Sequence record: KJ019146.1
Length of the DNA stretch: 64,000 nt
Strand: one strand, 5' to 3'
Shown here: positions 33,097 through 49,132 of the stretch, piece by piece
How positions within the stretch are numbered: position 1 is the first letter of the stretch
How the letters are laid out: the number at the start of each line of letters is the position of its first letter
Made by a program: the position numbers and the translations under genes
Notes under the pieces: generated by a model
What the model was told of the DNA's origin: nothing
Seen by the model: only the letters and a program-made list of their open reading frames with translations
Databases searched by the model: none

Positions 33097-33114
33097 CAAA
33101 GGAGATTATCAATT

Positions 33115-33426: not shown

Positions 33427-33443
33427 GGAAGTGGCACACCCCC

Positions 33444-33472: not shown

Positions 33473-33494
33473 ATGAAGGTAATCAACCAGAGAG

Positions 33495-33710: not shown

Positions 33711-33943
33711 AGACTATTCTTGAGAGAGAAGGTTTCCGTTTTATTGAGAAAGGTATTATCGAACTCAATGGAATGCCAGACTACCGACTACAGAAACAAG
33801 ATCACTATTCCCAAAGATGGAATGATGTATATCTCTTCGATAACAAGATGCAGTGTCTAACTGCTATGGAAGATATCGAATATTGTAAGTGGTTGTGTGG
33901 AGAACCCTGTTATGTTCGTGATGTTGTTGGTTCCTATTCATAG
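33707..33943 (+). CDS. hypothetical protein
   Basis: 78-aa ORF; ATGA overlap. Confidence 0.7.
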   Translation: MKTILEREGFRFIEKGIIELNGMPDYRLQKQDHYSQRWNDVYLFDNKMQCLTAMEDIEYCKWLCGEPCYVRDVVGSYS

Positions 33944-34177
33944 ATGAAGACTACATCCTTCCTAAGGTATCTTGGAAATACCTTACTAGTGTTGGGTCAT
34001 TTCACACTCCTTTGGGGGGATACACAGACCGCCTTGACTATCAAAATCATAGGTGGTCTTTCTTTGTTACCCTTTGCCATCTCCTGGAAGTTGTGGGATG
34101 TTGTGGCACTTGAGTTAATATTTGGAGGTATGGATGTAACCAAGTTCATCCAGTTAGTGTTCGGGGAGACACTTTAA
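33944..34177 (+). CDS. hypothetical membrane protein
   Basis: 77-aa hydrophobic ORF. Confidence 0.65.
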   Translation: MKTTSFLRYLGNTLLVLGHFTLLWGDTQTALTIKIIGGLSLLPFAISWKLWDVVALELIFGGMDVTKFIQLVFGETL

Positions 34178-34203
34178 ACTTTTCCCTGGCGCGCCCCAAT
34201 CAC

Positions 34204-34228
34204 ACCACTCCTCACGGGGTGGTTTTTT
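34204..34228 (+). terminator. intrinsic terminator
   Basis: ACCACTCC-tcac-GGGGTGGT followed by a T run. Confidence 0.75.
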
Positions 34229-34249
34229 ATTGCTTATAACTAGTGTAAC

Positions 34250-34558
34250 TTGGGTTACATTATGAAAGCCGACGCACAACTAGAACACCACGCCAATTGT
34301 TGGAATGCTATTCGAAACAATGATAAGGAATACTTTAAGATAGGAGTTGGTGTTTATAAAACCATCAACGCTGACAGGGAATACTATATCAATAGTCGTA
34401 TTGAAACTGATAAGAAGAGTGATATATCAGAAATGGATCAAGTGAAAGAAGCCCACTCTAAACACTTAAGTTACTTCATTGGATACAAATCAGAAGTAAC
34501 AGTTGAAGCTATCAGTAGTGATTGGAAATCTACATTATACCGGGTTACTACCTGCTAG
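34250..34558 (+). CDS. hypothetical protein
   Basis: ~100-aa ORF; the start may be the ATG at 34262. Confidence 0.6.
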
Positions 34559-34590
34559 GGTGTGTTATAATAGATGAAATGCATGTTGTG

Positions 34591-35589
34591 ATGAAAGCTT
34601 TAATCTCTGGAATTACAGGTCAAGATGGATCCTATCTTGCTGAACTTCTACTTAAGAAGGGGTATGAAGTCCATGGTATTATTCGTAGAACCTCCTCGTT
34701 TAATACAGGAAGAATCGATCATATCTTCGATCAGTTACACCTCCACTACGGGGATTTGACTGACTCCCTGAACATAGTCTCTATCATTAAGGAAGTAGAA
34801 CCTGATGAGATCTACAACCTAGGGGCACAGAGTCATGTGAAGGTATCATTCGAGATCCCTGAATACACTGCACAAACAGACGCTCTGGGAACTCTACGAG
34901 TATTGGAAGCAGTCCGTCTCCTAGGTATGGAGAATAGAGTTCGTATCTATCAGGCTTCCACTAGTGAGTTGTATGGATTAGTTCAGGCAGTTCCACAGAA
35001 AGAAGATACCCCATTCTATCCACGATCCCCATATGGTGTAGCGAAACTCTATGGTTACTGGATTATAAAGAACTACAGAGAGAGTTATGGGATGCACGCT
35101 AGTAGTGGTATCCTATTCAATCATGAGTCGCCACGACGGGGTGAGACCTTTGTAACTCGTAAGATTACTAGGGCACTCTCTCGTATCAGTACAGGACTAC
35201 AAGATGTTCTCTACCTAGGTAACCTAAACGCCAAGAGGGACTGGGGACACGCAGAGGACTTTGTAGAGGCTATGTGGTTGATGCTCCAACAGGATAAACC
35301 TGATGACTATGTGATTGCCACCGGGGAACAATACTCAGTTCGTGAATTTGTAGAGGCATCTGCTGAATACTTTGGTATGAAGATTGAGTGGCAGGGTGAG
35401 GGATTAGATGAAGTGGGTATAGATAGATTCACTAAGAAAGTCGTTGTTCGTGTCAGCGATAAGTATTTCCGTCCAGCAGAAGTTGAGTCTCTCTGGGGAG
35501 ATCCTACCAAGGCTAAAGAGGTATTGGGTTGGAAACCTAAGCATACCTTTAGTTCTTTGGTTGAAGATATGTGTATTTACGGTCAGTGA
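34591..35589 (+). CDS. gmd: GDP-mannose 4,6-dehydratase
   Basis: [38 protein letters not shown] and RDWGHA. ATG 34591 follows TG-T-TATAAT. Confidence 0.96.
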
Positions 35590-35591
35590 TT

Positions 35592-36518
35592 ATGAAAAAG
35601 GGTTCAACGGTAGCAGTATTTGGTTCGGGTGGATTGGCTGGAAGTGCCATCACCAGGGCACTCAGGTGTTACTTTATGGCACATAAGATTCTTACCCCTA
35701 GGAGTAAGGAACTAGACCTAAGAGAACAGGCAGATGTTCGTAGTTGGTTTAAGGAGAACAAAGTTGATTATGTATTCTTAGCCGCCGCCCTAGTTGGTGG
35801 TATTATGGCTAACAAGACTAGAAAGGCAGAGTTCTTACACGACAACCTAATGATGCAGTGTAATGTAATTGACTCTGCATACTATAGTGGAGTAAAGAAA
35901 CTCCTATTCTTAGGTACCTCTTGTATCTATCCAGCAGGAAGACACCATCCACTAGTGGAACATGAACTACTCACAGGACTATTAGAACCAACCAATGACG
36001 CATACGCAATCGCAAAGATCGCAGGGATCAAACAATGTGACTTCTACCGAGAACAATATGGATTTGATGCTATCTCTATCATGCCTCCTAATCTATATGG
36101 TCCTGGAGATAATTTCAATGAGGGATCAGGACATGTCCTCGCCTCATTGATGAATAGGTTTCACCTAGCGAAGGAAGCAGGTGCATCTAGAGTTGAATGT
36201 TGGGGTGATGGATCACCTATGAGAGAGTTTCTATATGTGGATGACTTAGCAGATGCTTCCTTATACTTTATGAATAGTTATAGTGAGTCTGGGCACATTA
36301 ATACTGGGACTGGTAGGGATGTAACTATCAAACAACTAGCGGAGACTATTGCTGATGTAGTTGGATACAAAGGTGAGATAGGTTGGGATACAACTAAACC
36401 CAACGGAAACCCAAGGAAACTACTTGACAGCAGTAGGGCAAACCTGTTAGGATGGGAACCCAAGGTTAAATTTGAAGACGGAATCAAACTCACATACAAC
36501 TGGTATCTAGCACAATGA
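35592..36518 (+). CDS. fcl: GDP-L-fucose synthase family epimerase/reductase (Fcl/WcaG/ColC)
   Basis: AAALVGGIMAN, LFLGTSCIYP, YAIAKIAG, NLYGPGDNF and REFLYVDD. Confidence 0.92.
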   Translation: MKKGSTVAVFGSGGLAGSAITRALRCYFMAHKILTPRSKELDLREQADVRSWFKENKVDYVFLAAALVGGIMANKTRKAEFLHDNLMMQCNVIDSAYYSGVKKLLFLGTSCIYPAGRHHPLVEHELLTGLLEPTNDAYAIAKIAGIKQCDFYREQYGFDAISIMPPNLYGPGDNFNEGSGHVLASLMNRFHLAKEAGASRVECWGDGSPMREFLYVDDLADASLYFMNSYSESGHINTGTGRDVTIKQLAETIADVVGYKGEIGWDTTKPNGNPRKLLDSSRANLLGWEPKVKFEDGIKLTYNWYLAQ

Positions 36519-37708
36519 CAAAGATTACAAATGGATATACGTGGCCTCTTATGAAGGACACTGTGACCAAGAGAGATAGGTTGAGGATGGCAAAGTTTAT
36601 CCTCACCAGTGATAGACTAACACAAGGTAAAGAAGTTCGTAAGTTTGAGGAGCAGTGGAGTGAGTGGCTTGGAGTTAAACATTCTCTTTTTGTTAGCAGT
36701 GGCAGTACCGCTAACCTACTTCTTGTGTCTGCTTGGAAGGAATTATACGAGATCCCAGACCAGTCGAAAGTAATTGTACCTGCTTGTACTTGGGTAACTA
36801 ATGTTGCTCCTATCATCCAGTGTGGTTTGACTCCAATCTTTTGTGACATCAACTTAGAAGACTACTCCTTTGATCTGGATAAACTACAGGATATTCGTGA
36901 TGAATATCAAGATGACATTAGAGGTATCTTTGTTACTCACCTCCTAGGATTTCCTGCTAATGTGGAAAAGTTTCGTGATGTTTTCCCCGACGCTCATATT
37001 CTAGAAGATGTATGTGAGAGTCACGGAGCAGTCCTCCCTAGTGGTGATAAGGCGGGAACCTTTGATGTTGGTGGCACATTTAGTTTCTACTTTGGGCACC
37101 ACATGACTACCATTGAAGGTGGTATGGTGAGTACTAATGATCCAGAACTCTATGATCTAATGAGAATGAAGCGTTCTCATGGGTTAGCGAGAGAATCACT
37201 ATACTTTGAAACATACAAAGAGAAGTATCCTGATGTAAATCCACAGTTTCTCTTCGTTACTGAGGGATATAACTTCCGTAATACTGATCTAGCTGCTGTA
37301 TTAGGACAGTCTCAACTGAAGAGACTAGACAGTATGATTGGGATTCGTAACAGGAACTATGAGTTATACCAACAATTACTAAAGAAACACGAACATGACC
37401 TTACACATGAGTATGGTGGTTCTTTCTATATCCCCTCCACACAGGGGGATGTAAGTAGTTTCTGTTTTCCATTTGTAGTTGATAATATGCACTGTTATCT
37501 TAAGTTAAAAGAACTTCTAGAAGAATACTATGTTGAGTATCGACCTATTGTGAGTGGTAACCTCCTACGACAACCATTCTTGAGAGAATATTCTGCTGAG
37601 TGTCCCAAGGCAGATATAGCCCATGAAAAGGGACTATATATTGGGAATAATCACTTTGTAGATGAGTCTAACTTTCACATGCTAGATGAGATTTTGAGCC
37701 AACTTTGA
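36515..37708 (+). CDS. colD: DegT-family PLP enzyme with active-site His: GDP-4-keto-6-deoxymannose 3-dehydratase (ColD-like)
   Basis: SSGSTANL, EDVCESHGA and FSFYFGHHMTTIEGG, with His where aminotransferases have the PLP-binding Lys. Confidence 0.75.
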   Translation: MTKITNGYTWPLMKDTVTKRDRLRMAKFILTSDRLTQGKEVRKFEEQWSEWLGVKHSLFVSSGSTANLLLVSAWKELYEIPDQSKVIVPACTWVTNVAPIIQCGLTPIFCDINLEDYSFDLDKLQDIRDEYQDDIRGIFVTHLLGFPANVEKFRDVFPDAHILEDVCESHGAVLPSGDKAGTFDVGGTFSFYFGHHMTTIEGGMVSTNDPELYDLMRMKRSHGLARESLYFETYKEKYPDVNPQFLFVTEGYNFRNTDLAAVLGQSQLKRLDSMIGIRNRNYELYQQLLKKHEHDLTHEYGGSFYIPSTQGDVSSFCFPFVVDNMHCYLKLKELLEEYYVEYRPIVSGNLLRQPFLREYSAECPKADIAHEKGLYIGNNHFVDESNFHMLDEILSQL

Positions 37709-37709
37709 T

Positions 37710-38504
37710 ATGACATTTTCATTTAATCATATGGGCAACTTGGGGCATCTGGGAAACCAGATGTTTCAGTATGCCGCACTCATTGGTATGGGGGCTAAGC
37801 ATGGGAGGAGTATTTGTATCCCCCATAAACAAAGTTTTGGGCAATCATACTACCAGGATCTTCGTAGTAATATCTACGATGCTTTCAACCTCTCACCCAA
37901 TGGTGTAGGTATCAGTAGGTTCCCCACAGTTCAGGAAGGTAGTTTCCACTTTGATGAAAACTTATTTGAGAACCCACCAGAGGAGAACTGTAACCTCTAT
38001 GGATTCTTCCAGAGTGAAAAGTGGTTCTCACATATCAAAGAAGGTATTAGGAAAGAGTTCACTCTAAAGGATGAGTACCGGGAAGTGGCACAACTGATGA
38101 GAGAACAACTCTCTGGTCAGGTTGTTGCTATTCATGTTCGTAGAACTGACTACCTATCCAATCCAAACCACGGAGCATTGGGTTTAGATTACTATGAGAA
38201 GGCACTGGAGTTGGTTCCCAATAACCTTACAGTAGTTGTATTCACTGATGATCCAGAGTGGGCTAAAGAACAACCACTCTTCCCAGACGATAGGTTCTTT
38301 GTATCAGAGACAGACTGTCCCTATACAGACCTTGCTCTTATGAGTATGTGTGATTATCATATTATTGCCAACAGTTCATACTCTTGGTGGGGTGCATACT
38401 TATCTGATAGTAAGAAAGTAATTGCTCCTAAACAGTGGTTTGGGGAACCACTTAAAACAAATAACCTGAAAGATCTTTATTGTGATGGGTGGGTGAAACT
38501 ATGA
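37710..38504 (+). CDS. GT11 alpha-1,2-fucosyl/colitosyltransferase
   Basis: GHLGNQMFQYA, GFFQSEKWF, IHVRRTDY and IIANSSYSWWGAYL. Confidence 0.9.
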   Translation: MTFSFNHMGNLGHLGNQMFQYAALIGMGAKHGRSICIPHKQSFGQSYYQDLRSNIYDAFNLSPNGVGISRFPTVQEGSFHFDENLFENPPEENCNLYGFFQSEKWFSHIKEGIRKEFTLKDEYREVAQLMREQLSGQVVAIHVRRTDYLSNPNHGALGLDYYEKALELVPNNLTVVVFTDDPEWAKEQPLFPDDRFFVSETDCPYTDLALMSMCDYHIIANSSYSWWGAYLSDSKKVIAPKQWFGEPLKTNNLKDLYCDGWVKL

Positions 38505-39124
38505 GTAACTTTGCAAGTGCTAAACAGTTTATCAAGAATGGTATTGATACACAACAGGAGTCTATCTCTGGTGGTGGCAGCACTATGGCTTCCACAGTTG
38601 CTTTCAGATACTTCCTACCAAAGTATATCAAACAGTATGGTATTGAGAGTATCTTAGACATTGGGTGTGGTGACTGGCATTGGATGTCTACTATCAGAGA
38701 AGAGTTTCCTGATGTAGACTATGAGGGATGGGATGCCTCTGAGGATATGATTAATCCCATGACTGAGAAGTACGGAACAGAGAATACCAGGTTTGAGGTA
38801 AAGGATATCATTGATAACAAGTATCCCAAAGTGGATTTGGTTATCGCTCGTGATGTTCTATTCCACCTCAAAGAAGATTACCTAAAGAAGGTTCTCAAGA
38901 ATATCAGTAAGGCAGGTGTGAAGTATCTACTAGCAACTACCTTCCCAGGTTTACCTAAGAACGAAGAACTCACTCCTAAGAAATATGACGGTTGGGGATT
39001 CAGACCAATCAATCTGGATATCGAACCTTATAATATGAAAGATTATTGTATCAATGATTTCAAGGAAACCACAGCTCCCAACAGAGGGTATCATCGTCAT
39101 GTGTATTTGTATGAGGTAAAATGA
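38501..39124 (+). CDS. class I SAM-dependent methyltransferase
   Basis: SGGGS, ILDIGCGD and DLVIARDVLFHL. Confidence 0.8.
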   Translation: MSNFASAKQFIKNGIDTQQESISGGGSTMASTVAFRYFLPKYIKQYGIESILDIGCGDWHWMSTIREEFPDVDYEGWDASEDMINPMTEKYGTENTRFEVKDIIDNKYPKVDLVIARDVLFHLKEDYLKKVLKNISKAGVKYLLATTFPGLPKNEELTPKKYDGWGFRPINLDIEPYNMKDYCINDFKETTAPNRGYHRHVYLYEVK

Positions 39125-39273
39125 AGATCGAAATTGAACTCTCTAAAGATGTAGAATACAAAGGAGAGAAACTAGGTGAGTATATCTGGAACCTAGAAGA
39201 GGGAATTAATCATGTTACTGGTTTTGGTGATTCACTTGAGGAATGTTTTAAGGAAATTGTGAGGTTTAGATGA
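39121..39273 (+). CDS. small hypothetical protein (50 aa)
   Basis: Read by hand; ATGA overlaps on both sides. Confidence 0.55.
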   Translation: MKIEIELSKDVEYKGEKLGEYIWNLEEGINHVTGFGDSLEECFKEIVRFR

Positions 39274-40001
39274 AGAAAGTAGCTATTATCTTTATTGGAA
39301 CAGGTAGATACCTAGAGTTTCTACCAAAGTATTATGAACAGGCAGAAGCAAACCTCTTCCCTGACAGACCCAAACACTACTATGTGTTTACTGATGGTGA
39401 CTTAGGTAATGAACTACCTGACAATGTAACTGTATACGAACAGGAACATCTCCAATGGCCATACATCACCCTCTATCGTTTCGGTATTATCCAGAAACAC
39501 CTAGAGGAGATTGAGAAGGAGTGTGGTTTCCTACTCTTTATGGATGCTGATACACAGGTAGTATCCCCTGTATCGTTCGATGAAGTATTCAGGAAGGGAA
39601 AACCCTATACAGGTGTTCATCACCCCTGCCACGCCCTGAATATGCCACCACACAATGAGTTTCCTGGTAGTCTAGAAACTAATACAGCATCCAAGGCAGC
39701 ATGTAAACCTGGTGATGACTTCTCTGTATATTGGCAAGGTTGTGTATGGGGTGGAAACATCAAGGGTGCTCGTAAGATTATTGATACTCTCCACCACAGA
39801 ACTAAACAAGATGAGGAGAATGGAATCATTGCTAAGTGGCATGATGAAAGTCATATCAATAGATACTTCCTTGACAACAAAGATAAGGTGAATACCCTAT
39901 CACCTAGTTTCGCATACCCAGAGTCCTTCACTGAGTATATGGAAGACTACGAACCTAAGATTGTACACCTAGCAAAAGAGAATTCTAAGTATCAGGTATG
40001 A
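39270..40001 (+). CDS. GT6 glycosyltransferase (alpha-1,3-Gal/GalNAc transferase, ABO family)
   Basis: IFIGTGRY, YYVFTD, FMDAD, WQGCVWGG and WHDESHINRY. Confidence 0.88.
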   Translation: MKKVAIIFIGTGRYLEFLPKYYEQAEANLFPDRPKHYYVFTDGDLGNELPDNVTVYEQEHLQWPYITLYRFGIIQKHLEEIEKECGFLLFMDADTQVVSPVSFDEVFRKGKPYTGVHHPCHALNMPPHNEFPGSLETNTASKAACKPGDDFSVYWQGCVWGGNIKGARKIIDTLHHRTKQDEENGIIAKWHDESHINRYFLDNKDKVNTLSPSFAYPESFTEYMEDYEPKIVHLAKENSKYQV

Positions 40002-40621
40002 GTTACTTCACAGATTATGACAACGAATTCACAGTATTCGAGGCACCAAAGAACGGGGGAACTACTCTCCGTCTTTGGATATACTACGCAGGAACAGGGG
40101 AGTTAGTAAAGTCAGCGGAGTCTGAATACTACGCTGGCACTGGAGAAACATACAAACAACTCCAAGAGTGGGGTTATGTGAATGGGGAATACGAGAACCC
40201 CAAGACCCAGATGGTATGTATCAAGAGAGACCCTGTAGATAGGTTTGTAAGTGCCTTCTATGATAAGGTAATCAAAGAGGGGAGAATCAAAGTAACCATC
40301 GATGAGTTTCTCTCAAACTATGAAGAGATACTTGATAAGTCTACCCTCAAGATGAATGATGGTAAGACTAACTTCATGAAGTTTCACTTTGAGTCACAGA
40401 CATATCACTTTGGTAAAGATAGAGATCTATATCATAAGGTCTTTGATATCTCAGAGGTCGGTACTGGTTTGAAGAAGTATCTGGAGGGTAAGTGGAATAT
40501 AGAACTACCTGATGTCCATGCTAGAAATAGTGGTGGTGGTAGAAAGTTTGATCTCTCCAGGGGACAACTGAATAGGGTGAAGGAAATCTACACACAGGAC
40601 TATTATAATGGGTGGTACTGA
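39998..40621 (+). CDS. sulfotransferase family 2-like protein
   Basis: 5'-PSB APKNGGTTL and 3'-PB RDPVDRFVSAF. Confidence 0.7.
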   Translation: MSYFTDYDNEFTVFEAPKNGGTTLRLWIYYAGTGELVKSAESEYYAGTGETYKQLQEWGYVNGEYENPKTQMVCIKRDPVDRFVSAFYDKVIKEGRIKVTIDEFLSNYEEILDKSTLKMNDGKTNFMKFHFESQTYHFGKDRDLYHKVFDISEVGTGLKKYLEGKWNIELPDVHARNSGGGRKFDLSRGQLNRVKEIYTQDYYNGWY

Positions 40622-41393
40622 AGGATATATCCTGATAGGTATTGGTGATAGGTACCTACAGATGACAGAGAACCTCACTAAAACTCTAAAGAAACATGGA
40701 GATAATAGAGGATCCCTAACTATCACAAGATCAGATAATAGGGAACTCTATAGTGAGTGTAACACTGAGTTTGAGAGGAATGGAACTCTACCTAAGATTA
40801 CCTTAGATAGATACTTACCTTTTGATCACAATATATTCCTAGATGCTGATATGTTATGTGTAGGTGATACACAACATGTATGGGATCTATTCAGGAGTAG
40901 TGATCAGTTTGTTCAACAGGTAGGATGTTTGGGAAGAGATCCTAACTTCCATGCTCACCAGTATGAGAGTGAGTTGGGTTTTGAGATTCCTAGAGTCCAT
41001 GGTGGTTGTATCTACATCAATAGAGAGAAACTAGACCCAGGGTTCTTTCCCTATATGAGAGAGTGTTTCCTAAACTATAAACAAATATTTCATAATAGTG
41101 GTCTAACCTATAAGAATAGTAGACCAGATCAACCACTATACGCTCTAGCAAATGGTATGTGGGGATTCAAACCTGTGGATCTATACACTAACCCTATCAT
41201 GACTATCGTGAATGATAGTACTCCACCACCACTAGATAGTGTATTCTTCAATAAGAAGAGAGGTCCTAAGTTAGATACTCCTGTTCCCTTTGTTCATGTA
41301 TTCCGTGGAGAAGAGGGTATGTCTAGGGGTTATACTAGAGGTGACCAGAAGATGTTGTTGTCCCATTATGATTACTACCTGAACTATGAATAA
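40608..41393 (+). CDS. GT-A fold glycosyltransferase (GT8-like)
   Basis: IFLDADML DxD motif, HGG, DQP. Confidence 0.6.
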   Translation: MGGTEGYILIGIGDRYLQMTENLTKTLKKHGDNRGSLTITRSDNRELYSECNTEFERNGTLPKITLDRYLPFDHNIFLDADMLCVGDTQHVWDLFRSSDQFVQQVGCLGRDPNFHAHQYESELGFEIPRVHGGCIYINREKLDPGFFPYMRECFLNYKQIFHNSGLTYKNSRPDQPLYALANGMWGFKPVDLYTNPIMTIVNDSTPPPLDSVFFNKKRGPKLDTPVPFVHVFRGEEGMSRGYTRGDQKMLLSHYDYYLNYE

Positions 41394-42174
41394 AACTATA
41401 TGGATGTGTTGGTTCCAGGGTTGGGATAAGGCACCAGAGATTACAGAGAAGTGTTTAGAGTCCTGGAAACACTACAATAGTGATTGGGATATTGTTCTAC
41501 TAGATGAATCCAACTACAAGGATTACATCTCCATTGATAAAGAACTACCAGGACTGAAGACAAACTATATCTCACTGGGTGATATCCTTCGTCTCTTTCT
41601 ACTAAAAGAGCATGGTGGAGTATGGGCAGATGCAACTATCTTCTGCAACAAACCAGTGGATTGGGTTTTGGATTATGAGGATTCTTTCATCTTCACCAGG
41701 AAGGATAAGATGATTGCCTCTTGGTTTGTTGCTGCTCAGAAAGATTCCCATGTTGTAGATGTATGGTATAATAAGATGTTAGAGTTCTGGAAGTATCGTA
41801 TGGAAAATACAGATACTTTCGAGCAACAATATGGTTGGATACACGCTTTGTTCCGTCAGTCCTACGCTCAGGATAAGGGGTTCAGGGATATTGTAGATAG
41901 TATGGATAAGATTGATTGCATGAGTGATGGTCAATCTAGAGGTAAGGGTCCGCACTTCTTTGCACCCTACAGTAAATACTTCTACAACCCTATCAGTGAC
42001 ACGATAAAGAATCGTATAGACTCTAAAGTTGATCCACTATATAAGTTGTCTTACAAGGCAAACACAGACTGGAGAAGTCCAGAGAACAGGGGTATCCACC
42101 CAGCAGACCAAAAGATTATGTTGGAATATCCAACTAATAGTGAACTACATTATCTACTCAACACATTAAAATGA
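41386..42174 (+). CDS. capsular polysaccharide synthesis protein (GT32-like)
   Basis: IWMCWFQG, DILRLFLLKEHGGVWADAT and YKLSYK. Confidence 0.85.
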   Translation: MNKTIWMCWFQGWDKAPEITEKCLESWKHYNSDWDIVLLDESNYKDYISIDKELPGLKTNYISLGDILRLFLLKEHGGVWADATIFCNKPVDWVLDYEDSFIFTRKDKMIASWFVAAQKDSHVVDVWYNKMLEFWKYRMENTDTFEQQYGWIHALFRQSYAQDKGFRDIVDSMDKIDCMSDGQSRGKGPHFFAPYSKYFYNPISDTIKNRIDSKVDPLYKLSYKANTDWRSPENRGIHPADQKIMLEYPTNSELHYLLNTLK

Positions 42175-43076
42175 CAAATAAATCATTGGTTACCGGTGGC
42201 GCGGGTTTCATCGGGTCACATATTGTGGACCGACTTATTACACTAGGACATCAAGTCGTAGTGATTGACAATGAATCCTCTGATGGTCATGATGAATACC
42301 ATTGGAACAGAAGCGGACAAGTACAAAACCATAAGGCAGACATTCGTGACTACGATGCAATCAAACACTTGTTTGGTGGAGTCAATAATGTTTTTCACCT
42401 TGCCGCTAAAGCATCAGTACAGGCGTCAGTAGATAACCCCCTACCAACTATTGCCACACAGGTAATGGGAACCGCCAATGTATTGGAGGCAGCACGACAA
42501 TCTGGTGTGAGTAAGTTTGTATATTCCTCTACTAGTGCTTGTTATGGTAACAACAACCCCATTCCTAATGTAGAAACGATGAGAGAAGATCCTCTCAACG
42601 CCTATGCTATTGGTAAGTTATCTGGGGAACAACTAGTTCGTGCCTATCACTACCTCTATGGTATGAAGACGGTGGCATTCCGTTATACCAATGTATATGG
42701 GGAGAGGGCAAGACATGTAGGACACTATGCTCCTGCTGTTAGTAAGTTCCTAAAGATGAGAGCACAGGGAGAACCTCTAACTATCTTTGGTGATGGTGCC
42801 CAACGCCGAGACTTTATTCATGTATCTGATGTAGTCAACGCTAACTGCTGTATTACCTATGAGGAACTAGAGCAGTGGGGTGAGACCTATAACATTGGTT
42901 ATGGTAAGAACTGGAGTATCCAAGAGATCGCAGACTCTATCAGTCAGGAACAGATTCACCTATCTGCTCGTACTGGTGAGATGCGTGAGACCCTTGCTGA
43001 TATTGGGAAGGCAAAGGCAGAGTTGATGTGGAAACCAAAGACTGACATCATGGATTGGATTAGGGTACAACTCTGA
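42171..43076 (+). CDS. NAD-dependent nucleotide-sugar epimerase/dehydratase
   Basis: VTGGAGFIGSH, FHLAA, YAIGK, RYTNVYG and RDFIHVSD. Confidence 0.92.
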   Translation: MTNKSLVTGGAGFIGSHIVDRLITLGHQVVVIDNESSDGHDEYHWNRSGQVQNHKADIRDYDAIKHLFGGVNNVFHLAAKASVQASVDNPLPTIATQVMGTANVLEAARQSGVSKFVYSSTSACYGNNNPIPNVETMREDPLNAYAIGKLSGEQLVRAYHYLYGMKTVAFRYTNVYGERARHVGHYAPAVSKFLKMRAQGEPLTIFGDGAQRRDFIHVSDVVNANCCITYEELEQWGETYNIGYGKNWSIQEIADSISQEQIHLSARTGEMRETLADIGKAKAELMWKPKTDIMDWIRVQL

Positions 43077-43693
43077 TGCCAGTATTTCAGAAGGACAACA
43101 AGAAAGTTCTATTCATCCATGTTCCCAAGACTGCAGGAAGTTCTGTGAATAAACTCTTTGTGAATAATGGATATGAAATGTCCTACTATTCTGAGAGTTC
43201 TAAAGATCTATACAATGGATTATGTGGACCGCAACATCTAGACTCACTTCTATTGGAAGATGAGTTCCAAGATTTCTCTCAGTTTGATTATATCTTCTCT
43301 ATCTTCAGAGACCCAGTAGACAGACATCTATCTGAGTTCACCTGGGCACCCTGGGGACTAATGGGTAGAAACATCTACACACCAGAAAGATTTGATGAGT
43401 GGTGTCCTAAGATATTCAGGGCGTATCAGGACTCACCATATAGGATGGATAACCACATTAGACCTCAACATGAGTTCTATGTCAATGGATGTGATGTGTA
43501 TGACTATGAAAATATCAATACACTCACAGAGAAACTATGTGATAAAATAGGTCTAGATAATAAAGAGATGCCATATGAAAGGTCTTCACGATATGATAGT
43601 GAGGATTATGTCATCTATGAAGATACTTACAATTGTATTACTGAATTTTACAAAGGAGACTATCAATGGCAAAAGGATTCAGTCCTGTTGTGA
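43076..43693 (+). CDS. sulfotransferase family 2-like protein
   Basis: FIHVPKTAGSSV, FRDPVDR.LSE and HIRPQ. Confidence 0.8.
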   Translation: MPVFQKDNKKVLFIHVPKTAGSSVNKLFVNNGYEMSYYSESSKDLYNGLCGPQHLDSLLLEDEFQDFSQFDYIFSIFRDPVDRHLSEFTWAPWGLMGRNIYTPERFDEWCPKIFRAYQDSPYRMDNHIRPQHEFYVNGCDVYDYENINTLTEKLCDKIGLDNKEMPYERSSRYDSEDYVIYEDTYNCITEFYKGDYQWQKDSVLL

Positions 43694-44544
43694 CTAAGGA
43701 TAAGAACAAGTCCCAGTTCAAACTACAGGGTGTTCCTAGGATTTACTACATCAGTTTAGATGATCATGCTCATCGTCAAGACTATATGGAGTCCCAGTTT
43801 GAAGACTGGGGCATCACTAACTTCGAAAGAATCTCTGCTCATGATGGTAGAGGTGATAATGATCTGAGTGATATTCTCAAAGGATCTTATCCAAAGATGA
43901 TGAGTTCTGGTGAGGTTGGTTGTGTAACCTCTCACCTAAAGGCACTAAAACACTGGTTAGATACTACAGAGGGTGAAGAGTTTCTCCTTATTATGGAGGA
44001 TGATTGTGATATCTCCACTGCTTCCCACTGGGGGTTCTCCTGGAGAGAGTTTGTTGGGAATATTCCATCCCATGTAGATTGTGTTCAGTTAGCAGTTATC
44101 AACCCATCAGAACTACATATCAAACTCCATATCAGGTTTGTGAATGATTTCTCCACTGCCTCATACCTAATCCGTAGATCACACGCAGAGAAGTTAGTTA
44201 GACTCTATTGTAGGGGTGATAAGTATAAACTTGATAGTGATATCAAACCCAGAGCAGTTGCTGATGATCTTATCTACAACTCTGGTGTGACTCTTGCTAT
44301 GCCTCTATTTGCCTTCAAGATTGCACTAGGTTCCAGTATCCATGATGTCCATATCAATACCTTCCACAAGAGTAGTCATGATGGTATCTGGGAGTTTTGG
44401 AAGAAAACAGCACCAACTATTGAGAACTGGAAACCATTCTTCAACTATGATGCCTATCTGGGAACCCTACCACCCAATGTTGTGGTTCAACAATGGCAGC
44501 AAAAACAGGAATCCAAAGCAAAAGATTCAGGGGCTTCGCAATAG
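43666..44544 (+). CDS. GT25 (Lex2B/LgtB-like) glycosyltransferase
   Basis: YISLD...R, FERISAHDG, GEVGCVTSH and LIMEDD. Confidence 0.85.
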   Translation: MAKGFSPVVTKDKNKSQFKLQGVPRIYYISLDDHAHRQDYMESQFEDWGITNFERISAHDGRGDNDLSDILKGSYPKMMSSGEVGCVTSHLKALKHWLDTTEGEEFLLIMEDDCDISTASHWGFSWREFVGNIPSHVDCVQLAVINPSELHIKLHIRFVNDFSTASYLIRRSHAEKLVRLYCRGDKYKLDSDIKPRAVADDLIYNSGVTLAMPLFAFKIALGSSIHDVHINTFHKSSHDGIWEFWKKTAPTIENWKPFFNYDAYLGTLPPNVVVQQWQQKQESKAKDSGASQ

Positions 44545-44588
44545 AACATATATATGTTATAATATTTACATTCACCCATGAGGTTATT

Positions 44589-44708
44589 ATGAAATTTGGT
44601 TTTACCCCCGAAGCAGAAATCCTAAACGCTCGTTTGGCAATGTTGGGATTCGTTATCGCCGTAGGCACTTACTTGACCACAGGTCAGATTATTCCAGGAG
44701 TTCTTTGA
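44589..44708 (+). CDS. hli: high-light-inducible protein
   Basis: [13 protein letters not shown] chlorophyll-binding motif; TGQIIPG. ATG 44589 follows GAGG. Confidence 0.92.
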
Positions 44709-45001
44709 TGGCGTTTTCTGTAACACTTAGATCACCTACTGGTGAAGATAAAGTTGTAACAGTGGAGGGAGATCAATACATCCTAGATGCCGCAGAGGAA
44801 GCGGGTGTAGATCTCCCATATTCATGTAGAGCTGGTGCTTGTTCATCCTGTGCAGGTAAGATTGTATCTGGAAAGGTGAATCAAGAAGACCAGTCATTCT
44901 TAGATGATGATCAGATCGAAGCAGGTTTCGCACTCTTATGTGTATCTTATGCCGAATCTGATTGTGTGATTGAGACGGAAAAAGAGGAAACCCTTTACTG
45001 A
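44708..45001 (+). CDS. petF: plant-type [2Fe-2S] ferredoxin
   Basis: [16 protein letters not shown]...LLCV. Confidence 0.97.
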
Positions 45002-45006
45002 GACTG

Positions 45007-45156
45007 ATGTCTAATCCAAACGCTCTATATGAAGATATGGAGAAACTGAATGCCCTCTACGAAGAACTTTGTTGGGGGCATAACGATGAACTACAATTTT
45101 CCCATGACGGGGAGAGCATTATTATTACCAATAAAACCCAGGAGAAACAAAAATGA
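45007..45156 (+). CDS. small hypothetical protein (49 aa)
   Basis: Read by hand: MSNPNALYEDMEKLNALYEELCWGH... Confidence 0.6.
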   Translation: MSNPNALYEDMEKLNALYEELCWGHNDELQFSHDGESIIITNKTQEKQK

Positions 45157-45362
45157 CAGTAACAACTGAAGACGGCGGACGCACAAACATGTACGCCACT
45201 GAACCCACTATGTTTATTGATCCTTCTTACACTGAGAAGTATGGTTTAGAAACACACGCGGAACGAGCTGAAACAGCAAACGGGCGTTGGGCAATGATTG
45301 GATTTGTTTCTGGTATTGTATCCTATGTTATTACTGGTAACTTCTTCTTTGGTGTTATCTAA
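45153..45362 (+). CDS. hli: high-light-inducible protein (second copy)
   Basis: AETANGRWAMIGF motif. Confidence 0.92.
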   Translation: MTVTTEDGGRTNMYATEPTMFIDPSYTEKYGLETHAERAETANGRWAMIGFVSGIVSYVITGNFFFGVI

Positions 45363-45367
45363 TATTA

Positions 45368-45396
45368 GAAGGAGGGTTTGATACCCTCCTTTTTTT
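45368..45396 (+). terminator. intrinsic terminator
   Basis: AAGGAGGG-tttgata-CCCTCCTT followed by a T run. Confidence 0.8.
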
Positions 45397-45403
45397 GTGC
45401 TCC

Positions 45404-45411
45404 TATAAATA
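45404..45411 (+). promoter_or_regulatory. T4-type late promoter
   Basis: TATAAATA upstream of the tail fibre gene. Confidence 0.75.
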
Positions 45412-45443
45412 CCTTCTAGGCACCCACACACCTTCGTATCAAA

Positions 45444-47852: not shown

Positions 47853-47865
47853 CTGGCACAGGGGG

Positions 47866-47907
47866 TTGGCACCCTGGGGAATCTGTGTTATAATAAACAC
47901 ATAAATA
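47866..47907 (+). promoter_or_regulatory. dual psbA promoter: sigma70-type plus late-type
   Basis: TTGGCA-N17-TATAAT (47866-47894) and CATAAATA (47900-47907). Confidence 0.7.
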
Positions 47908-47934
47908 AGAAATGTAACGTTCTTATTACAACAC

Positions 47935-48045
47935 TTCCATCTAACCGAGACCTATGGGGAAGTAAAATACGTCTCTAATACCTACACCGGAGGGTGGTGT
48001 AGGAATAATACTATCGTCAGCTCCCCCTGGCACTACTTACCCTTT
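47935..48045 (+). ncRNA. structured psbA leader, PhotoRC-II-motif-like
   Basis: Stems GAGAC/GTCTC and CCTACACC/GGTGTAGG. The GGAGGGT loop is complementary to downstream ACCCT. Position matches the known motif; not confirmed by search. Confidence 0.55.
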
Positions 48046-48052
48046 TTACACA

Positions 48053-49132
48053 ATGGCTTCAACACTTACACGCCGTCAAGGCGCATCTATCTGGGATCAG
48101 TTTTGTTCCTGGGTCACATCAACCAACAATCGTCTTTACGTCGGTTGGTTCGGTGTTCTAATGATTCCTACATTGTTAGCCGCAACTGTATGTTTCATTA
48201 TCGCTTTCGTGGGTGCTCCCCCAGTGGACATCGACGGAATCCGTGAACCAGTAGCTGGTTCACTCATGTATGGAAACAACATCATCTCTGGTGCAGTTGT
48301 TCCTAGTTCAAACGCAATCGGTCTACACTTCTACCCAATCTGGGAAGCAGCCACACTCGACGAATGGCTCTACAACGGTGGTCCTTTCCAACTAGTTGTC
48401 TTCCACTTCCTTATTGGTATCTACGCCTATATGGGACGTGAGTGGGAACTCTCTTATCGTTTAGGTATGAGACCTTGGATCTGTGTAGCATACTCTGCAC
48501 CAGTTGCAGCAGCTTCAGCAGTATTCCTAGTCTATCCTTTCGGTCAAGGTTCATTCTCAGACGCGATGCCCTTGGGTATCTCTGGAACATTCAACTACAT
48601 GTTGGTATTCCAAGCAGAACATAACATCCTGATGCACCCCTTCCACATGTTGGGAGTCGCAGGTGTCTTTGGTGGTTCATTGTTCTCAGCGATGCACGGT
48701 TCACTTGTTACATCTTCACTCGTAAGAGAGACAACTGAAACAGAATCCCAGAACTATGGTTACAAGTTTGGACAAGAAGAGGAGACCTACAACATCGTTG
48801 CAGCCCATGGCTACTTCGGTCGTTTGATCTTCCAATACGCCTCATTCAACAACTCCAGAAGTCTTCACTTCTTTCTCGCAGCGTGGCCCGTTGTAGGTAT
48901 CTGGTTCACCGCACTTGGTGTTTCCACAATGGCATTCAACCTCAATGGTTTCAACTTCAACCAGTCTGTTATCGACGGACAAGGTAGAGTATTGAACACC
49001 TGGGCGGATGTATTGAACAGAGCTGGTCTAGGTATGGAGGTGATGCATGAGAGAAATGCACACAACTTCCCACTAGATTTGGCAGCAGCTGAGTCCACAC
49101 CTGTGGCTCTAATTGCACCATCTGTTGGTTGA
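48053..49132 (+). CDS. psbA: photosystem II D1 protein
   Basis: [26 protein letters not shown] and [14 protein letters not shown]; uninterrupted. Confidence 0.99.

What the first reader, a model, noticed from the sequence alone, without database searches (positions are those of the whole stretch)
37710..44544. GT25 + GT11 + GT6 set predicts an ABO blood-group-like glycan assembly line
Seen in sequence: GT11, GT6, GT8-like, GT32-like, GT25 and an epimerase lie in one tightly overlapping operon. Established: GT25 enzymes often add beta-Gal, GT11 adds alpha-1,2-Fuc (H antigen), and GT6 adds alpha-1,3-Gal/GalNAc to it. E. coli O86 makes a B-like antigen with WbnK (GT11) and WbnI (GT6). Inference: a Gal/GalNAc-alpha1,3-(Col/Fuc-alpha1,2)-Gal epitope could mask receptors (superinfection exclusion), deter grazers or decorate the virion. 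No flippase, polymerase or ligase is present, so the acceptor must be a host glycan or a protein.
Basis: partly seen in the sequence, partly recalled or inferred. Interest (0 to 1): 0.7.

Follow-up and report, generated by a model that had tools for sequence, protein, structure and literature searches.

The report
Cyanophage blood-group-like glycan gene cluster
A marine cyanophage carries an intact set of soluble sugar-building enzymes, centred on a three-gene cassette (GT11, GT6, GT25) shared by many cyanophages, that should make a short blood-group-like sugar chain tipped with the rare sugar colitose and probably sulfated and methylated; what the chain is attached to is not known.

Summary
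The window is Synechococcus phage ACG-2014f isolate Syn7803C16 (KJ019146.1). Window 37710-44544 encodes GT11, GT6, a GT8-like fold, GT32/Caps_synth, a UDP-hexose 4-epimerase and GT25, with gene junctions from a 28-base overlap to a 2-base gap.

The unit starts upstream with GMD, a ColD-type 3-dehydratase and an Fcl/ColC-like reductase, the GDP-L-colitose route.

- All 13 genes are intact and under purifying selection (pN/pS 0.06-0.10).
- In the 80 best IMG/VR GT6 loci, GT11 is present in 78, and GT25 in 39 of 42 with enough flank. The trio is a conserved cassette.
- The GT6 keeps the acceptor-pocket residues of enzymes that use 2'-fucosylated galactose. Its donor pocket (Q-G-C-V) matches no characterised enzyme, so A-like or B-like cannot be called.
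- The genome has no polytopic membrane ORF besides PsbA/PsbD, so the acceptor is pre-existing.
- No late-promoter motif lies in the unit.

Best reading: extension of a host envelope glycolipid during infection. Virion glycosylation is a serious rival. Cyanophage "LPS clusters" and cyanophage GT6 are already known, so this is a new variant of a known kind.

The parts
34204..34223 (+). Intrinsic-terminator-like hairpin followed by a T-run; marks the upstream end of the transcription unit
   Evidence: 8-bp stem, 5 GC pairs, T-run; sequence read
34262..34558 (+). 98-aa ORF of unknown function, first gene after the terminator
   Evidence: Annotated in KJ019146.1; no Pfam hit. The 'not intact' flag came from my off-by-one coordinates, not from a break.
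34591..35589 (+). GDP-mannose 4,6-dehydratase (GMD)
   Evidence: TIGR01472 558.8 bits against cut-off 415; PF16363 E 5e-152
35592..36518 (+). GDP-fucose-synthase-like epimerase/reductase (Fcl or ColC)
   Evidence: NF047922 419 bits, below cut-off 500; best PDB hit is E. coli GDP-fucose synthetase, 2.4e-91; 73-80% identical to orthologues in ColD-bearing clusters and 50-55% to those in clusters without ColD
36515..37708 (+). ColD-type GDP-4-keto-6-deoxy-mannose 3-dehydratase
   Evidence: Best PDB hits are ColD/WbdK 2gms, 3b8x and 3gr9, E about 1e-50 over full length. His195 aligns with the residue mutated in 3b8x. The H-H signature separates it from Lys-type aminotransferases in the same alignment.
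37710..38504 (+). GT11 alpha-1,2-fucosyl/colitosyl-transferase-like
   Evidence: PF01531 98.5 bits; phrog_2644; residues 142-148 H-V-R-R-T-D-Y
38501..39124 (+). Class I SAM-dependent methyltransferase
   Evidence: Methyltransf_12/25/31/23 hits, E 1e-10 to 1e-7; phrog_3382
39121..39273 (+). 50-aa ORF of unknown function (phrog_3687)
   Evidence: only synonymous differences between isolates; apparently absent from close relative L104 (no tblastn hit, MTase-GT6 offset 149 bases shorter)
39270..40001 (+). GT6 retaining alpha-1,3-glycosyltransferase, metal-dependent (DXD) cyanophage clade
   Evidence: PF03414; BoGT6a 2e-27 and human ABO transferases about 1e-16; D92-A-D94, W190-H-D-E193, H118, C120, Q156-G-C-V159, H233, K236
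39998..40621 (+). Sulfotransferase-like protein ST_a (Sulfotransfer_2)
   Evidence: PF03567 29.5 bits against 22; P-K-N-G-G-T-T and R-D-P-V-D-R-x-x-S motifs
40608..41393 (+). GT8-like retaining GT-A glycosyltransferase
   Evidence: AF2 pLDDT 93.6; Foldseek hits to GT8 enzymes; invariant DxD; homologue P0017 carries PF01501
41386..42174 (+). GT32-like / Caps_synth glycosyltransferase
   Evidence: PF05704 E 6e-41; PF04488 E 1.6e-8
42171..43076 (+). UDP-hexose (or UDP-HexNAc) 4-epimerase-like SDR
   Evidence: Best PDB hits: UDP-glucose 4-epimerase 4zrm 5.7e-50, WbpP, WbgU; GalE model 176 bits against heptose epimerase model 121 bits
43076..43693 (+). Sulfotransferase-like protein ST_b (Sulfotransfer_2)
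   Evidence: PF03567 33.6 bits against 22; invariant P17 K18 G21 and R78 P80 R83 S86; AF2 pLDDT 90; top Foldseek hits are carbohydrate sulfotransferases but weak, E 0.03
43666..44544 (+). GT25 inverting glycosyltransferase
   Evidence: PF01755 47.7 bits; invariant E111-D-D113; profile hits Mimivirus R655 1e-7, human ColGalT1 1e-4, bacterial GT25 2e-4
44493..45362 (+). hli, ferredoxin, small ORF and hli; these auxiliary genes share the same terminator-bounded unit
45367..45393 (+). Strong terminator-like hairpin closing the unit
   Evidence: 11-bp stem plus T-run
45404..45411 (+). T4-type late-promoter-like motif serving the tail-fibre gene (45444-47852); it lies outside the glycan unit
   Evidence: no ATAAATA on either strand between 32794 and 45405

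Best explanation
The cluster is a self-contained cytoplasmic glycan-tailoring module that the phage expresses during infection. Shown by sequence: it encodes the three enzymes of the GDP-L-colitose route (GMD, ColD-type dehydratase, Fcl/ColC-like reductase), a UDP-hexose 4-epimerase, five soluble glycosyltransferases, two PAPS-type sulfotransferases and a SAM methyltransferase, and it has no membrane or export proteins. Shown by comparison: GT11, GT6 and GT25 form a conserved cyanophage cassette. Inferred chain: GT25 puts a beta-linked Gal (or Glc) on a pre-existing acceptor. GT11 adds alpha-1,2-L-colitose (3-deoxy-fucose; possibly fucose as well) to it. The Mn-dependent GT6 then adds an alpha-1,3-hexose to the same Gal, giving an H/ABO-type branched core. 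The GT8-like and GT32-like enzymes add further alpha-linked sugars, and the product is sulfated and methylated. Most likely acceptor (inferred, least certain): the host's lipid A-core or lipo-oligosaccharide, or another envelope glycolipid, on the cytoplasmic face of the inner membrane. Host MsbA/Lpt-type machinery would export it, which is why no flippase, polymerase or ligase is needed. The altered surface would then change adsorption of other phages or of progeny, or recognition by grazers.
For: ColD is confirmed by the catalytic His and by full-length similarity to 2gms. All 13 proteins lack transmembrane segments, and the genome has no polytopic ORF except PsbA/PsbD. Cassette conservation: GT11 in 78 of 80 viral GT6 loci and abutting upstream in 61 of 78; GT25 in 39 of 42 loci with at least 8 kb downstream; the same order occurs in P-SSM2, S-PRM1, S-CAM9, B3 and DSL-LC02. 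GT6 and GT11 pair in 46 of 80 cellular loci, and two bacterial loci (L041, L052) carry GMD, ColC-like, ColD (H-H type), GT11 and GT6 together. The GT6 acceptor-pocket residues are of the fucosylated-acceptor type (PMC3516806, which also reports that the DXD-type Parachlamydia GT6 uses H-antigen or 2'-fucosyllactose). The genes are intact, pN/pS is 0.06-0.10 between isolates, and 45 records match at least 80% of the 10.3-kb query at 97.7% identity or more, with identical 10,282-base spans in all 14 ACG-2014f rows listed. Uncultured relatives at 62-86% amino-acid identity keep the same order. The unit is bounded by terminators, has no late-promoter motif and shares its transcript space with hli and ferredoxin auxiliary genes. 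GT6, GT8 (LgtC), GT11 and GT25 are the families used for lipo-oligosaccharide and O-antigen outer sugars in bacteria (established knowledge). The literature already treats such cyanophage clusters as cell-surface-modifying (PMC9602691, PMC12801897).
Against: No acceptor has been identified. No close GT6 homologue was found in a marine Synechococcus or Prochlorococcus genome among the 80 best of 433 cellular hits, so the host's own glycan need not contain this epitope. The GT25 association is phage-specific (1 of 80 cellular loci). The GT6 donor pocket (Q-G-C-V) is uncharacterised, so the third sugar is unknown. The Fcl/ColC-like enzyme is below the Fcl equivalog cut-off and cannot be assigned. 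The phage carries no PAPS-forming enzyme; the S-CAM7 'adenylylsulfate kinase' annotation proved to be a methyltransferase. Absence of a late promoter does not exclude enzymes that act on virion proteins. The genome also has glycosyltransferases inside structural modules, and tail-fibre genes follow GT25 in ACG-2014f, S-CAM7 and L094.
Confidence: 0.45

Rival explanations
1. Virion glycosylation. The same enzymes assemble the glycan in the cytoplasm on the phage's own structural proteins (tail fibres, collagen-like or tail-collar fibres, capsid decoration), as in mycobacteriophages, chloroviruses and mimiviruses. This would give particles a shielding or adhesive coat.
For: All enzymes are soluble and act where virions assemble. 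A tail-fibre gene follows the unit in ACG-2014f, S-CAM7 and L094. The genome has other glycosyltransferases inside structural modules: a collagen triple-helix protein, a GT1/4 and a 2OG-Fe(II) oxygenase beside the short tail fibre, and a GT2 plus an epimerase beside tail-collar proteins. The closest solved relatives of the GT25 are Mimivirus R655 and human procollagen galactosyltransferase. A bacterial homologue of ST_b lies in a flagellin (protein) glycosylation island. Iyer et al. 2010 predicted that hydroxylase plus sulfotransferase operons modify collagen-like and tail-collar proteins (PMC2938197). The GT25 link to GT6 and GT11 is specific to phages.
Against: No late promoter lies in the unit. 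The collagen-like protein is confined to ACG-2014f, with a partial match in S-CAM7, so it cannot be the conserved acceptor of a cassette present in 72 phage records. The window has no Gly-X-Y protein. The searchable library holds no report of a glycosylated cyanophage virion. The GT25 profile hits bacterial LOS-type GT25 about as well as the collagen enzyme.
Confidence: 0.3
2. Glycosylation of a host surface protein (pilin, S-layer or motility protein), or production of an exported or soluble oligosaccharide or exopolysaccharide primer, rather than lipopolysaccharide.
For: The cassette only needs a pre-existing acceptor. ST_b relatives occur in a flagellin glycosylation island. A pilin-like gene is annotated in the window at about 51718-52098.
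Against: Nothing links the cluster to a specific host protein. GT6, GT11 and GT25 are typical of glycolipid or O-antigen outer sugars in bacteria (established knowledge). No oligosaccharyltransferase or exporter is encoded.
Confidence: 0.12
3. DNA modification. The glycosyltransferases glycosylate phage DNA to escape restriction, as suggested in general terms for cyanophage glycosyltransferases in PMC12801897.
For: T4-type phages glucosylate DNA (established knowledge). The suggestion appears in PMC12801897.
Against: The families present (GT6, GT11, GT25, GT8-like, GT32) act on glycan acceptors. A GDP-deoxyhexose pathway, sulfotransferases and an H-type acceptor pocket make no sense for DNA. 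No hydroxymethylase is annotated in the genome.
Confidence: 0.02
4. Passenger genes. The cluster is a recently captured piece of cellular DNA in the hyperplastic region with no role for the phage.
For: It lies in the variable region near psbA, where host-like genes accumulate. The middle of the cluster varies between lineages.
Against: pN/pS is 0.06-0.10 and all genes are intact in the isolates compared. The order is kept at 62-86% protein identity. The GT6 clade signature is invariant in 80 viral loci, and the closest hits in cellular genome assemblies are short MAG contigs that look like phage fragments.
Confidence: 0.03

Closest known systems
Prochlorococcus phage P-SSM2 'LPS gene' cluster (PSSM2_257-271) and similar cell-wall synthesis/modification clusters of S-SCSM1 and S-SCSM2R
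   Same: Same genomic position (upstream of hli, ferredoxin and psbA). Same skeleton: GMD, Fcl-like, then GT11, GT6, epimerase, GT25. The role proposed in the literature is the same, host surface modification (PMC9602691, PMC12801897).
   Different: P-SSM2 has no ColD, so its sugar is fucose rather than colitose. No homologue of either sulfotransferase or of the GT8-like and GT32-like genes was detected in the P-SSM2 locus by tblastn. It carries GT1 and GT2 genes and a phytanoyl-CoA dioxygenase instead. Its GT6 is only 30% identical and has a different donor pocket (A-G-G-F with Ala at A7).
E. coli O86 O-antigen enzymes WbnK (GT11) and WbnI (GT6), which make a blood-group-B-like epitope (own knowledge; Yi et al. 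2005 is cited in PMC3516806)
   Same: A GT11 fucosylates Gal at O-2 and a GT6 then adds an alpha-1,3 sugar to the same Gal. Adjacent GT11 and GT6 genes are common in cellular GT6 loci.
   Different: O86 is a Wzx/Wzy-dependent O-antigen cluster with flippase, polymerase and ligase; the phage has none. Characterised bacterial GT6 such as BoGT6a are metal-independent (N-x-N), whereas the phage enzyme has DXD (PMC3516806). The phage donor pocket differs.
Bacteroides ovatus BoGT6a and Parachlamydia PaGT6 (PMC3516806, PMC3961637)
   Same: Minimal single-domain GT6. Catalytic Glu, the acceptor His, the Trp and the C-terminal Lys are conserved. PaGT6 and cyanophage GT6 share the DXD motif, and PaGT6 uses H-antigen or 2'-fucosyllactose.
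   Different: About 30-35% identity. BoGT6a and PaGT6 transfer GalNAc. The phage has Q-G-C-V where BoGT6a has A-G-G-L, with Cys at the position that must be small for GalNAc.
GDP-L-colitose pathway of E. coli O55/O111, Yersinia pseudotuberculosis and Vibrio cholerae O139 (ColD structures 2gms, 3gr9)
   Same: GMD, ColD with the catalytic His, and an Fcl-like ColC. In those bacteria colitose replaces fucose on Gal in H- or Lewis-like epitopes (own knowledge).
   Different: It is encoded here by a lytic phage. No paper in the searchable library links colitose to a cyanophage. The ColC assignment is not proven.
Virus-encoded virion glycosylation (mycobacteriophages, Freeman et al. 2023, cited in PMC12801897; chloroviruses; Mimivirus R655 and collagen-like fibrils)
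   Same: Soluble virus-encoded glycosyltransferases plus nucleotide-sugar enzymes acting in the cytoplasm. The closest solved relative of the GT25 is Mimivirus R655.
   Different: No evidence that ACG-2014f virions are glycosylated. The enzyme families and the predicted glycan differ.

Membership tests
CAZy GT6 (Pfam PF03414) | Profile match above the curated cut-off over the catalytic domain | tested here: met
   75.7 bits against 25, residues 8-220; BoGT6a 2e-27 and human ABO transferases about 1e-16
CAZy GT6 (Pfam PF03414) | Catalytic Glu in the W-H-D-E stretch, and the C-terminal Lys | tested here: met
   W190-H-D-E193 aligns with BoGT6a E192 (Q in mutant 4cjb). K236 is invariant.
Metal-dependent (DXD) GT6 clade of cyanophage and Parachlamydia (PMC3516806) | D-x-D in place of the bacterial N-x-N; minimal domain without a C-terminal membrane-binding extension | tested here: met
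   D92-A-D94; 243 aa; all 80 viral loci have D-A-D
H-antigen-dependent GT6 (GTA/GTB/BoGT6a type) | His at acceptor position A1 (Gln in alpha3GT); no Trp at A2 or A7 | tested here: met
   H118, C120 and H233 by alignment to BoGT6a, using the positions defined in PMC3516806. This rests on alignment only, with no structure or assay.
A-type or B-type donor specificity | Donor-pocket tetrad matching a characterised GalNAc- or Gal-transferase | tested here: inconclusive
   Q156-G-C-V159 matches none (BoGT6a A-G-G-L; alpha3GT H-A-A-I; P-SSM2 A-G-G-F)
CAZy GT11 (Pfam PF01531) | Profile match above cut-off, including the C-terminal nucleotide-binding half | tested here: met
   98.5 bits against 23.9, residues 87-263; H-V-R-R-T-D-Y at 142-148
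CAZy GT11 (Pfam PF01531) | Donor GDP-Fuc versus GDP-Col; alpha-1,2 linkage to beta-Gal | not testable with these tools
   No solved GT11 structure was found by sequence. The inference rests only on the adjacent colitose genes.
CAZy GT25 (Pfam PF01755) | Profile match above cut-off and the acidic E-D-D motif | tested here: met
   47.7 bits against 24, N-terminal half only; E111-D-D113 invariant in 8 phage orthologues; profile hits R655, ColGalT1 and bacterial GT25
GDP-L-colitose pathway | GMD equivalog | tested here: met
   TIGR01472 558.8 against 415
GDP-L-colitose pathway | ColD: PMP-dependent 3-dehydratase with His replacing the Schiff-base Lys | tested here: met
   Best hits are ColD structures. 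His195 aligns with the residue mutated in 3b8x. The H-H versus Lys split is seen across 16 homologues.
GDP-L-colitose pathway | ColC (C5-epimerase/4-reductase) distinct from Fcl | tested here: inconclusive
   419 bits against an Fcl cut-off of 500. No ColC structure is available for comparison.
PAPS-dependent carbohydrate sulfotransferase (Pfam PF03567) | Profile above cut-off plus the 5'-phosphosulfate and 3'-phosphate binding motifs | tested here: met
   29.5 and 33.6 bits against 22; P-K-x-G-x-(T/S) and R-D-P-x-x-R-x-x-S in both proteins; invariant in 22 homologues
PAPS-dependent carbohydrate sulfotransferase (Pfam PF03567) | Sulfotransferase fold | tested here: inconclusive
   The top Foldseek hits are nearly all sulfotransferases, but the best E is 0.026 and TM about 0.5
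CAZy GT8 | Sequence-profile membership (PF01501) | tested here: not met
   No Pfam hit for 40608-41393. The S-CAM7 relative scores 21.5, below 24.3. One homologue has a precomputed PF01501 hit. It works like a GT8 by fold and DxD, but membership is unproven.
CAZy GT32 / Caps_synth | PF05704 and PF04488 above cut-off | tested here: met
   141.1 against 24.5 and 35.6 against 23
Wzx/Wzy-dependent O-antigen gene cluster (E. coli O86 type) | Flippase, polymerase, chain-length regulator or ligase encoded with the glycosyltransferases | tested here: not met
   No polytopic membrane ORF in 225 kb except PsbA and PsbD; none annotated
Cyanophage LPS / cell-wall-modification cluster (P-SSM2 type) | Nucleotide-sugar enzymes plus several glycosyltransferases in the hyperplastic region upstream of hli and psbA | tested here: met
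   Synteny and orthology with P-SSM2, DSL-LC02, S-CAM9, S-PRM1 and B3

The most novel reading that the evidence does not exclude
The conserved GT11-GT6-GT25 cassette does not touch the host. It decorates the phage's own fibres or capsid with a histo-blood-group-like glycan, which in the ACG-2014f lineage carries colitose, sulfate and methyl groups. That would make these abundant marine cyanophages glycosylated particles whose coat affects adsorption, stickiness to marine particles or recognition by grazers.
Probability: 0.25. Interest if true: 0.8.

Novelty: new variant of a known kind. Interest (0 to 1): 0.5.

Why it matters
Cyanomyoviruses are among the most abundant viruses in the sea, and what their 'LPS genes' do has been an open question since P-SSM2 was sequenced. 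This analysis turns a list of annotations into a specific, checkable prediction. A three-enzyme cassette, present in nearly all cyanophage GT6 loci, should build an H/ABO-type branched core. One lineage swaps fucose for colitose and adds sulfate and methyl groups. Colitose, sulfate and O-methyl sugars are easy chemical signatures to look for in envelope or virion material. Finding them would show for the first time where these phage enzymes act. The phage GT6 clade also has an invariant, uncharacterised donor pocket. That bears on the evolution of the blood-group transferase family, for which a phage-like DXD enzyme has been proposed as ancestor (PMC3516806).

Tried and rejected
1. S-CAM7's syntenic cluster is annotated with an 'adenylylsulfate kinase', which would have given a phage PAPS supply. 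Pfam shows it is a SAM methyltransferase, and tblastn finds it only in S-CAM7. I dropped this lead.

2. Collagen idea: GT25 includes collagen galactosyltransferases, so I looked for Gly-X-Y proteins. The window has none. The genome has one outside the window, but its globular parts occur only in ACG-2014f and partly in S-CAM7, not in the other cassette-bearing phages. It is therefore not the conserved acceptor.

3. Sequence searches of the PDB found nothing useful for the GT8-like ORF or for GT11 (only spurious TPR matches).

4. ColC versus Fcl could not be resolved.

5. I looked for early/middle/late expression classes of the P-SSM2 orthologues in PMC7238727 and its supplements and in bioRxiv 10.1101/167650, and found none.

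6. Brew et al. 2010 (PMC2988317), the review that discusses phage GT6, is not held. What I say of it rests on PMC3516806 and PMC3961637 and on my own recollection.

8. The sigma-70 scan gives no more sites than shuffles (36 against 38.9), so I do not claim a specific early promoter.

They are not tool-derived and are not used as evidence here.

Full report
**Identity of the window.** Window 34000-45500 is 100% identical to Synechococcus phage ACG-2014f isolate Syn7803C16 (KJ019146.1, record 158000-169500), so window position equals record position minus 124000. The phage is a T4-like cyanomyovirus (Kyanoviridae, Atlauavirus). The neighbours of the finding are typical of this group: hli, ferredoxin, a tail fibre with a Peptidase_S74 chaperone domain, psbA and psbD. 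GenBank already labels the GT11, GT6 and GT25 genes.

**The observation.** All named families are present at the stated coordinates:
- GT11 at 37710-38504
- GT6 at 39270-40001
- Caps_synth/GT32 at 41386-42174
- an SDR epimerase at 42171-43076
- GT25 at 43666-44544

The ORF at 40608-41393 has no Pfam, NCBIfam or PDB sequence match. A model built on 19 homologues (pLDDT 93.6) matches GT8-type retaining GT-A enzymes almost exclusively (LARGE1, GlyE, LgtC, XXYLT1, glycogenin). D79-x-D81 is invariant in those homologues.

Both sulfotransferase-like proteins score above Pfam's cut-off and carry both PAPS-binding motifs. The ST_b model resembles carbohydrate sulfotransferases, but only weakly.

The SDR is closest to UDP-glucose and UDP-GlcNAc 4-epimerases (4zrm, WbpP, WbgU). 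It is not closest to ADP-heptose epimerase, which is what GenBank calls it.

**The unit is larger than the finding.** A terminator-like hairpin at 34204-34223 and a strong one at 45367-45393 bracket the region. After the first hairpin come a 98-aa ORF, GMD (equivalog score) and an Fcl-like reductase that scores below the Fcl cut-off. Next is a DegT-family protein whose best solved relatives are ColD (GDP-4-keto-6-deoxymannose 3-dehydratase). Its His195 aligns with the ColD residue that is mutated in 3b8x. In one tblastn alignment of 16 homologues, dehydratases show H-H at this site and true aminotransferases show Lys.

Junctions among the 13 genes from GMD to GT25 range from a 28-base overlap to a 2-base gap. 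None of the 13 proteins has a transmembrane segment.

**Are the genes functional?**
- Forty-five ACG-2014f records match at least 80% of the 10.28-kb query at 97.7% identity or more; the 14 ACG-2014f rows listed show identical 10,282-base spans.
- Against isolates Syn7803C15 and US26, all 13 genes are intact and overall pN/pS is 0.10 and 0.06.
- Uncultured relatives at 62-86% protein identity keep the order GMD, ColC-like, ColD, GT11, (MTase), GT6, ST_a, (GT8-like), GT32, ST_b, GT25.
- No gene is broken.

**Are GT11, GT6 and GT25 linked?** They are, and strongly.
- GT6 occurs in 72 phage records and GT11 in 103. The two are adjacent in S-PRM1, S-CAM9, S-8S53/56, DSL-LC02, Bellamy and B3/B23, and about 1.5 kb apart in P-SSM2 and P-SSM5.
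- In the 80 best IMG/VR loci found with a GT6 alignment, 78 carry GT11, and in 61 of the 78 with enough upstream flank it abuts GT6 upstream.
- GT25 is present in 39 of the 42 loci with at least 8 kb downstream, and often directly follows GT6.
- In 80 GT6 loci from cellular genomes, 46 have GT11 within 10 kb but only one has GT25.
- GT6 plus GT11 is therefore a general functional pair, and the addition of GT25 is a cyanophage trait.
- Colitose is a minority variant: ColD-type genes are in 7 of the 80 viral loci, while GMD plus Fcl-like genes are in 23 of the 61 with at least 5 kb upstream.
- The sulfotransferases, the methyltransferase, the GT8-like and the GT32 genes are confined to the ACG-2014f-like lineage, occurring in 2-4 of the 80 loci.
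- Two bacterial loci (L041 Rhizobiales, L052 Riflebacteria MAG) hold GMD, a ColC-like gene, an H-H-type ColD, GT11 and GT6 together.

**What the GT6 sequence says.** The best solved relative is BoGT6a (2e-27), followed by human ABO transferases. I used the positions defined in PMC3516806.
- The UDP-contacting Ile, Thr, Tyr and Arg are conserved, as are the catalytic Glu (E193), the acceptor Trp (W190) and the C-terminal Lys (K236).
- The metal motif is D-A-D, where the Bacteroides enzyme has N-x-N. This places the protein in the metal-dependent cyanophage/Parachlamydia clade described there.
- Acceptor position A1 is His, as in enzymes that take 2'-fucosylated Gal; alpha3GT has Gln. A2 is Cys and A7 is His, neither being the Trp that excludes fucose in alpha3GT.
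- The donor tetrad is Q-G-C-V. BoGT6a has A-G-G-L, alpha3GT has H-A-A-I and P-SSM2 has A-G-G-F. A Cys where GalNAc-transferases need Gly argues against GalNAc, but the donor is otherwise open.
- The signature D-A-D / H / C / Q-G-C-(L,V,F,I) / E / H / K holds at every aligned position in all 80 viral loci; one locus is truncated before the last two positions.
- The closest hits in cellular genome assemblies (above 50% identity) lie on short MAG contigs that carry phage-like neighbours. True bacterial and archaeal relatives are 31-41% identical.

**Topology and timing.** A hydropathy scan of the full 225-kb genome finds no polytopic membrane ORF on the annotated strands except PsbA and PsbD. There is therefore no Wzx, Wzy or WaaL equivalent, and the glycan must be built on something that already exists and, if it leaves the cell, be exported by the host.

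The late-promoter core ATAAATA is absent on both strands from 32794 to 45405. The first copy (TATAAATA, 45404-45411) sits 33 bases before the tail-fibre start. The cluster shares its terminator-bounded space with hli and ferredoxin genes. This fits early or middle expression, but it is inference. Sigma-70-like matches are no more frequent than in shuffles.

**Where does the glycan go?**
- The families involved (GT6, GT8/LgtC type, GT11, GT25) are those that extend lipo-oligosaccharide and O-antigen outer regions in bacteria. Soluble enzymes acting on lipid A-core at the inner face of the membrane need no dedicated flippase. The literature has long proposed host-surface modification for such clusters (PMC9602691, PMC12801897). 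I rate this the most likely reading, at 0.45.
- The virion rival (0.30) has real support:
  - tail-fibre genes follow GT25 in three lineages;
  - the genome has glycosyltransferases inside structural modules, next to a collagen triple-helix protein with a 2OG oxygenase and next to tail-collar proteins;
  - the nearest solved GT25 relatives are Mimivirus R655 and human procollagen galactosyltransferase;
  - a bacterial ST_b homologue lies in a flagellin glycosylation island;
  - Iyer et al. predicted sulfation of collagen-like and tail-collar proteins (PMC2938197).
- Against the virion rival, the collagen-like protein is not co-distributed with the cassette, and there is no late promoter in the unit.
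- DNA glycosylation and 'passenger genes' are unlikely, for the reasons given under the rival explanations.

**Comparison with what is known.** This is a positional and compositional variant of the P-SSM2 'LPS cluster'. The GT11 to GT6 logic is that of E. coli O86 and of BoGT6a and PaGT6. Cyanophage GT6 genes are discussed in PMC3516806 and PMC3961637.

Three things appear new relative to the searchable library:
- quantification of a conserved GT11-GT6-GT25 cassette;
- a complete ColD-type colitose route in a phage;
- two sulfotransferases plus a methyltransferase in the same unit, together with the invariant Q-G-C donor pocket of the phage clade.

I rate the finding as a new variant of a known kind, with interest 0.5.

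**Limits.**
- All linkages, donors and acceptors are inferred from family membership, alignment and gene neighbourhood.
- In notebook entry 2 I wrote two four-residue human GTA and GTB motifs from memory. They are not used here.

Noticed in passing
window 34591-35589 compared with L095 (KJ019145.1): GMD shows pS 0.40 between two ACG-2014f isolates, while the neighbouring genes show 0.01-0.10. This looks like a recombinant (mosaic) allele confined to GMD. In IMG/VR contig L104, ColD is likewise 82% identical while its neighbours are 94-99%.
   Followed up: partly
L096 12545-13114 (S-CAM7, KU686213.1 168676-169245): The gene annotated 'adenylylsulfate kinase' matches only SAM-methyltransferase Pfam families and no APS-kinase family, so it is probably misannotated.
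   Followed up: yes
window 42171-43076: GenBank calls this gene ADP-L-glycero-D-mannoheptose-6-epimerase. Its best solved relatives are UDP-glucose and UDP-GlcNAc 4-epimerases, and the GalE model outscores the heptose epimerase model.
   Followed up: yes
outside the window: KJ019146.1 13501-18977 (L097): A 929-aa collagen triple-helix repeat protein (Pfam Collagen, E 3.6e-41) is followed by a GT1/4 glycosyltransferase and a 2OG-Fe(II) oxygenase (PF13640), just upstream of the putative short tail fibre. This could be a fibre hydroxylation and glycosylation module. The protein's globular parts occur only in ACG-2014f and partly in S-CAM7.
   Followed up: partly
outside the window: KJ019146.1 214686-220076 (L098): Three tail-collar domain proteins and a 'surface protein 26-residue repeat' protein are followed by a GT2 glycosyltransferase and a nucleotide-sugar epimerase. 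This is a third set of glycan genes in the genome, again beside structural genes.
   Followed up: no
window 39121-39273: The 50-aa ORF between the methyltransferase and GT6 appears absent from a 96-99% identical IMG/VR contig: L104 gives no tblastn hit for it and its MTase-to-GT6 offset is 149 bases shorter.
   Followed up: partly
L012, L013, L014 (GTDB genome contigs): Short contigs binned as Chitinophagaceae, Thermoplasmatales and Methanobacteriota MAGs carry the closest hits to the phage GT6 in cellular genome assemblies, with phage-like neighbours (GMD 77%, GT11 46%, ST_b 49%). They look like cyanophage fragments mis-binned into MAGs.
   Followed up: partly
window 45444-47852: The tail fibre with a C-terminal Peptidase_S74 chaperone domain has its own late-promoter-like motif (45404-45411), directly after a strong terminator. 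Its length differs between isolates (802 aa here, 771 aa in US26).
   Followed up: no
window 47866-47894: The best sigma-70-like match of the scanned region (32800-48200) (TTGGCA, 17-base spacer, TATAAT with an upstream TG; 11 of 12) lies upstream of psbA (48053).
   Followed up: no
window 16271-17482: A 403-aa protein has a cytidylyltransferase-like domain only in residues 108-206. TATAAATA motifs sit at 16240 and 17461, just before the gene start and just before its end. A similar gene is annotated in S-CAM7.
   Followed up: no
window 6118-7360: Two adjacent 2OG-Fe(II) oxygenase (PF13640) genes; their substrates are unknown.
   Followed up: no
L101 (Neiella marina, BMDX01000031.1): A flagellin glycosylation island holds two flagellins, a TPR/GT41 protein, dTDP-sugar enzymes, five sulfotransferase-family genes, a methyltransferase and a DegT enzyme. 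This implies a heavily sulfated flagellin glycan in a marine bacterium.
   Followed up: no
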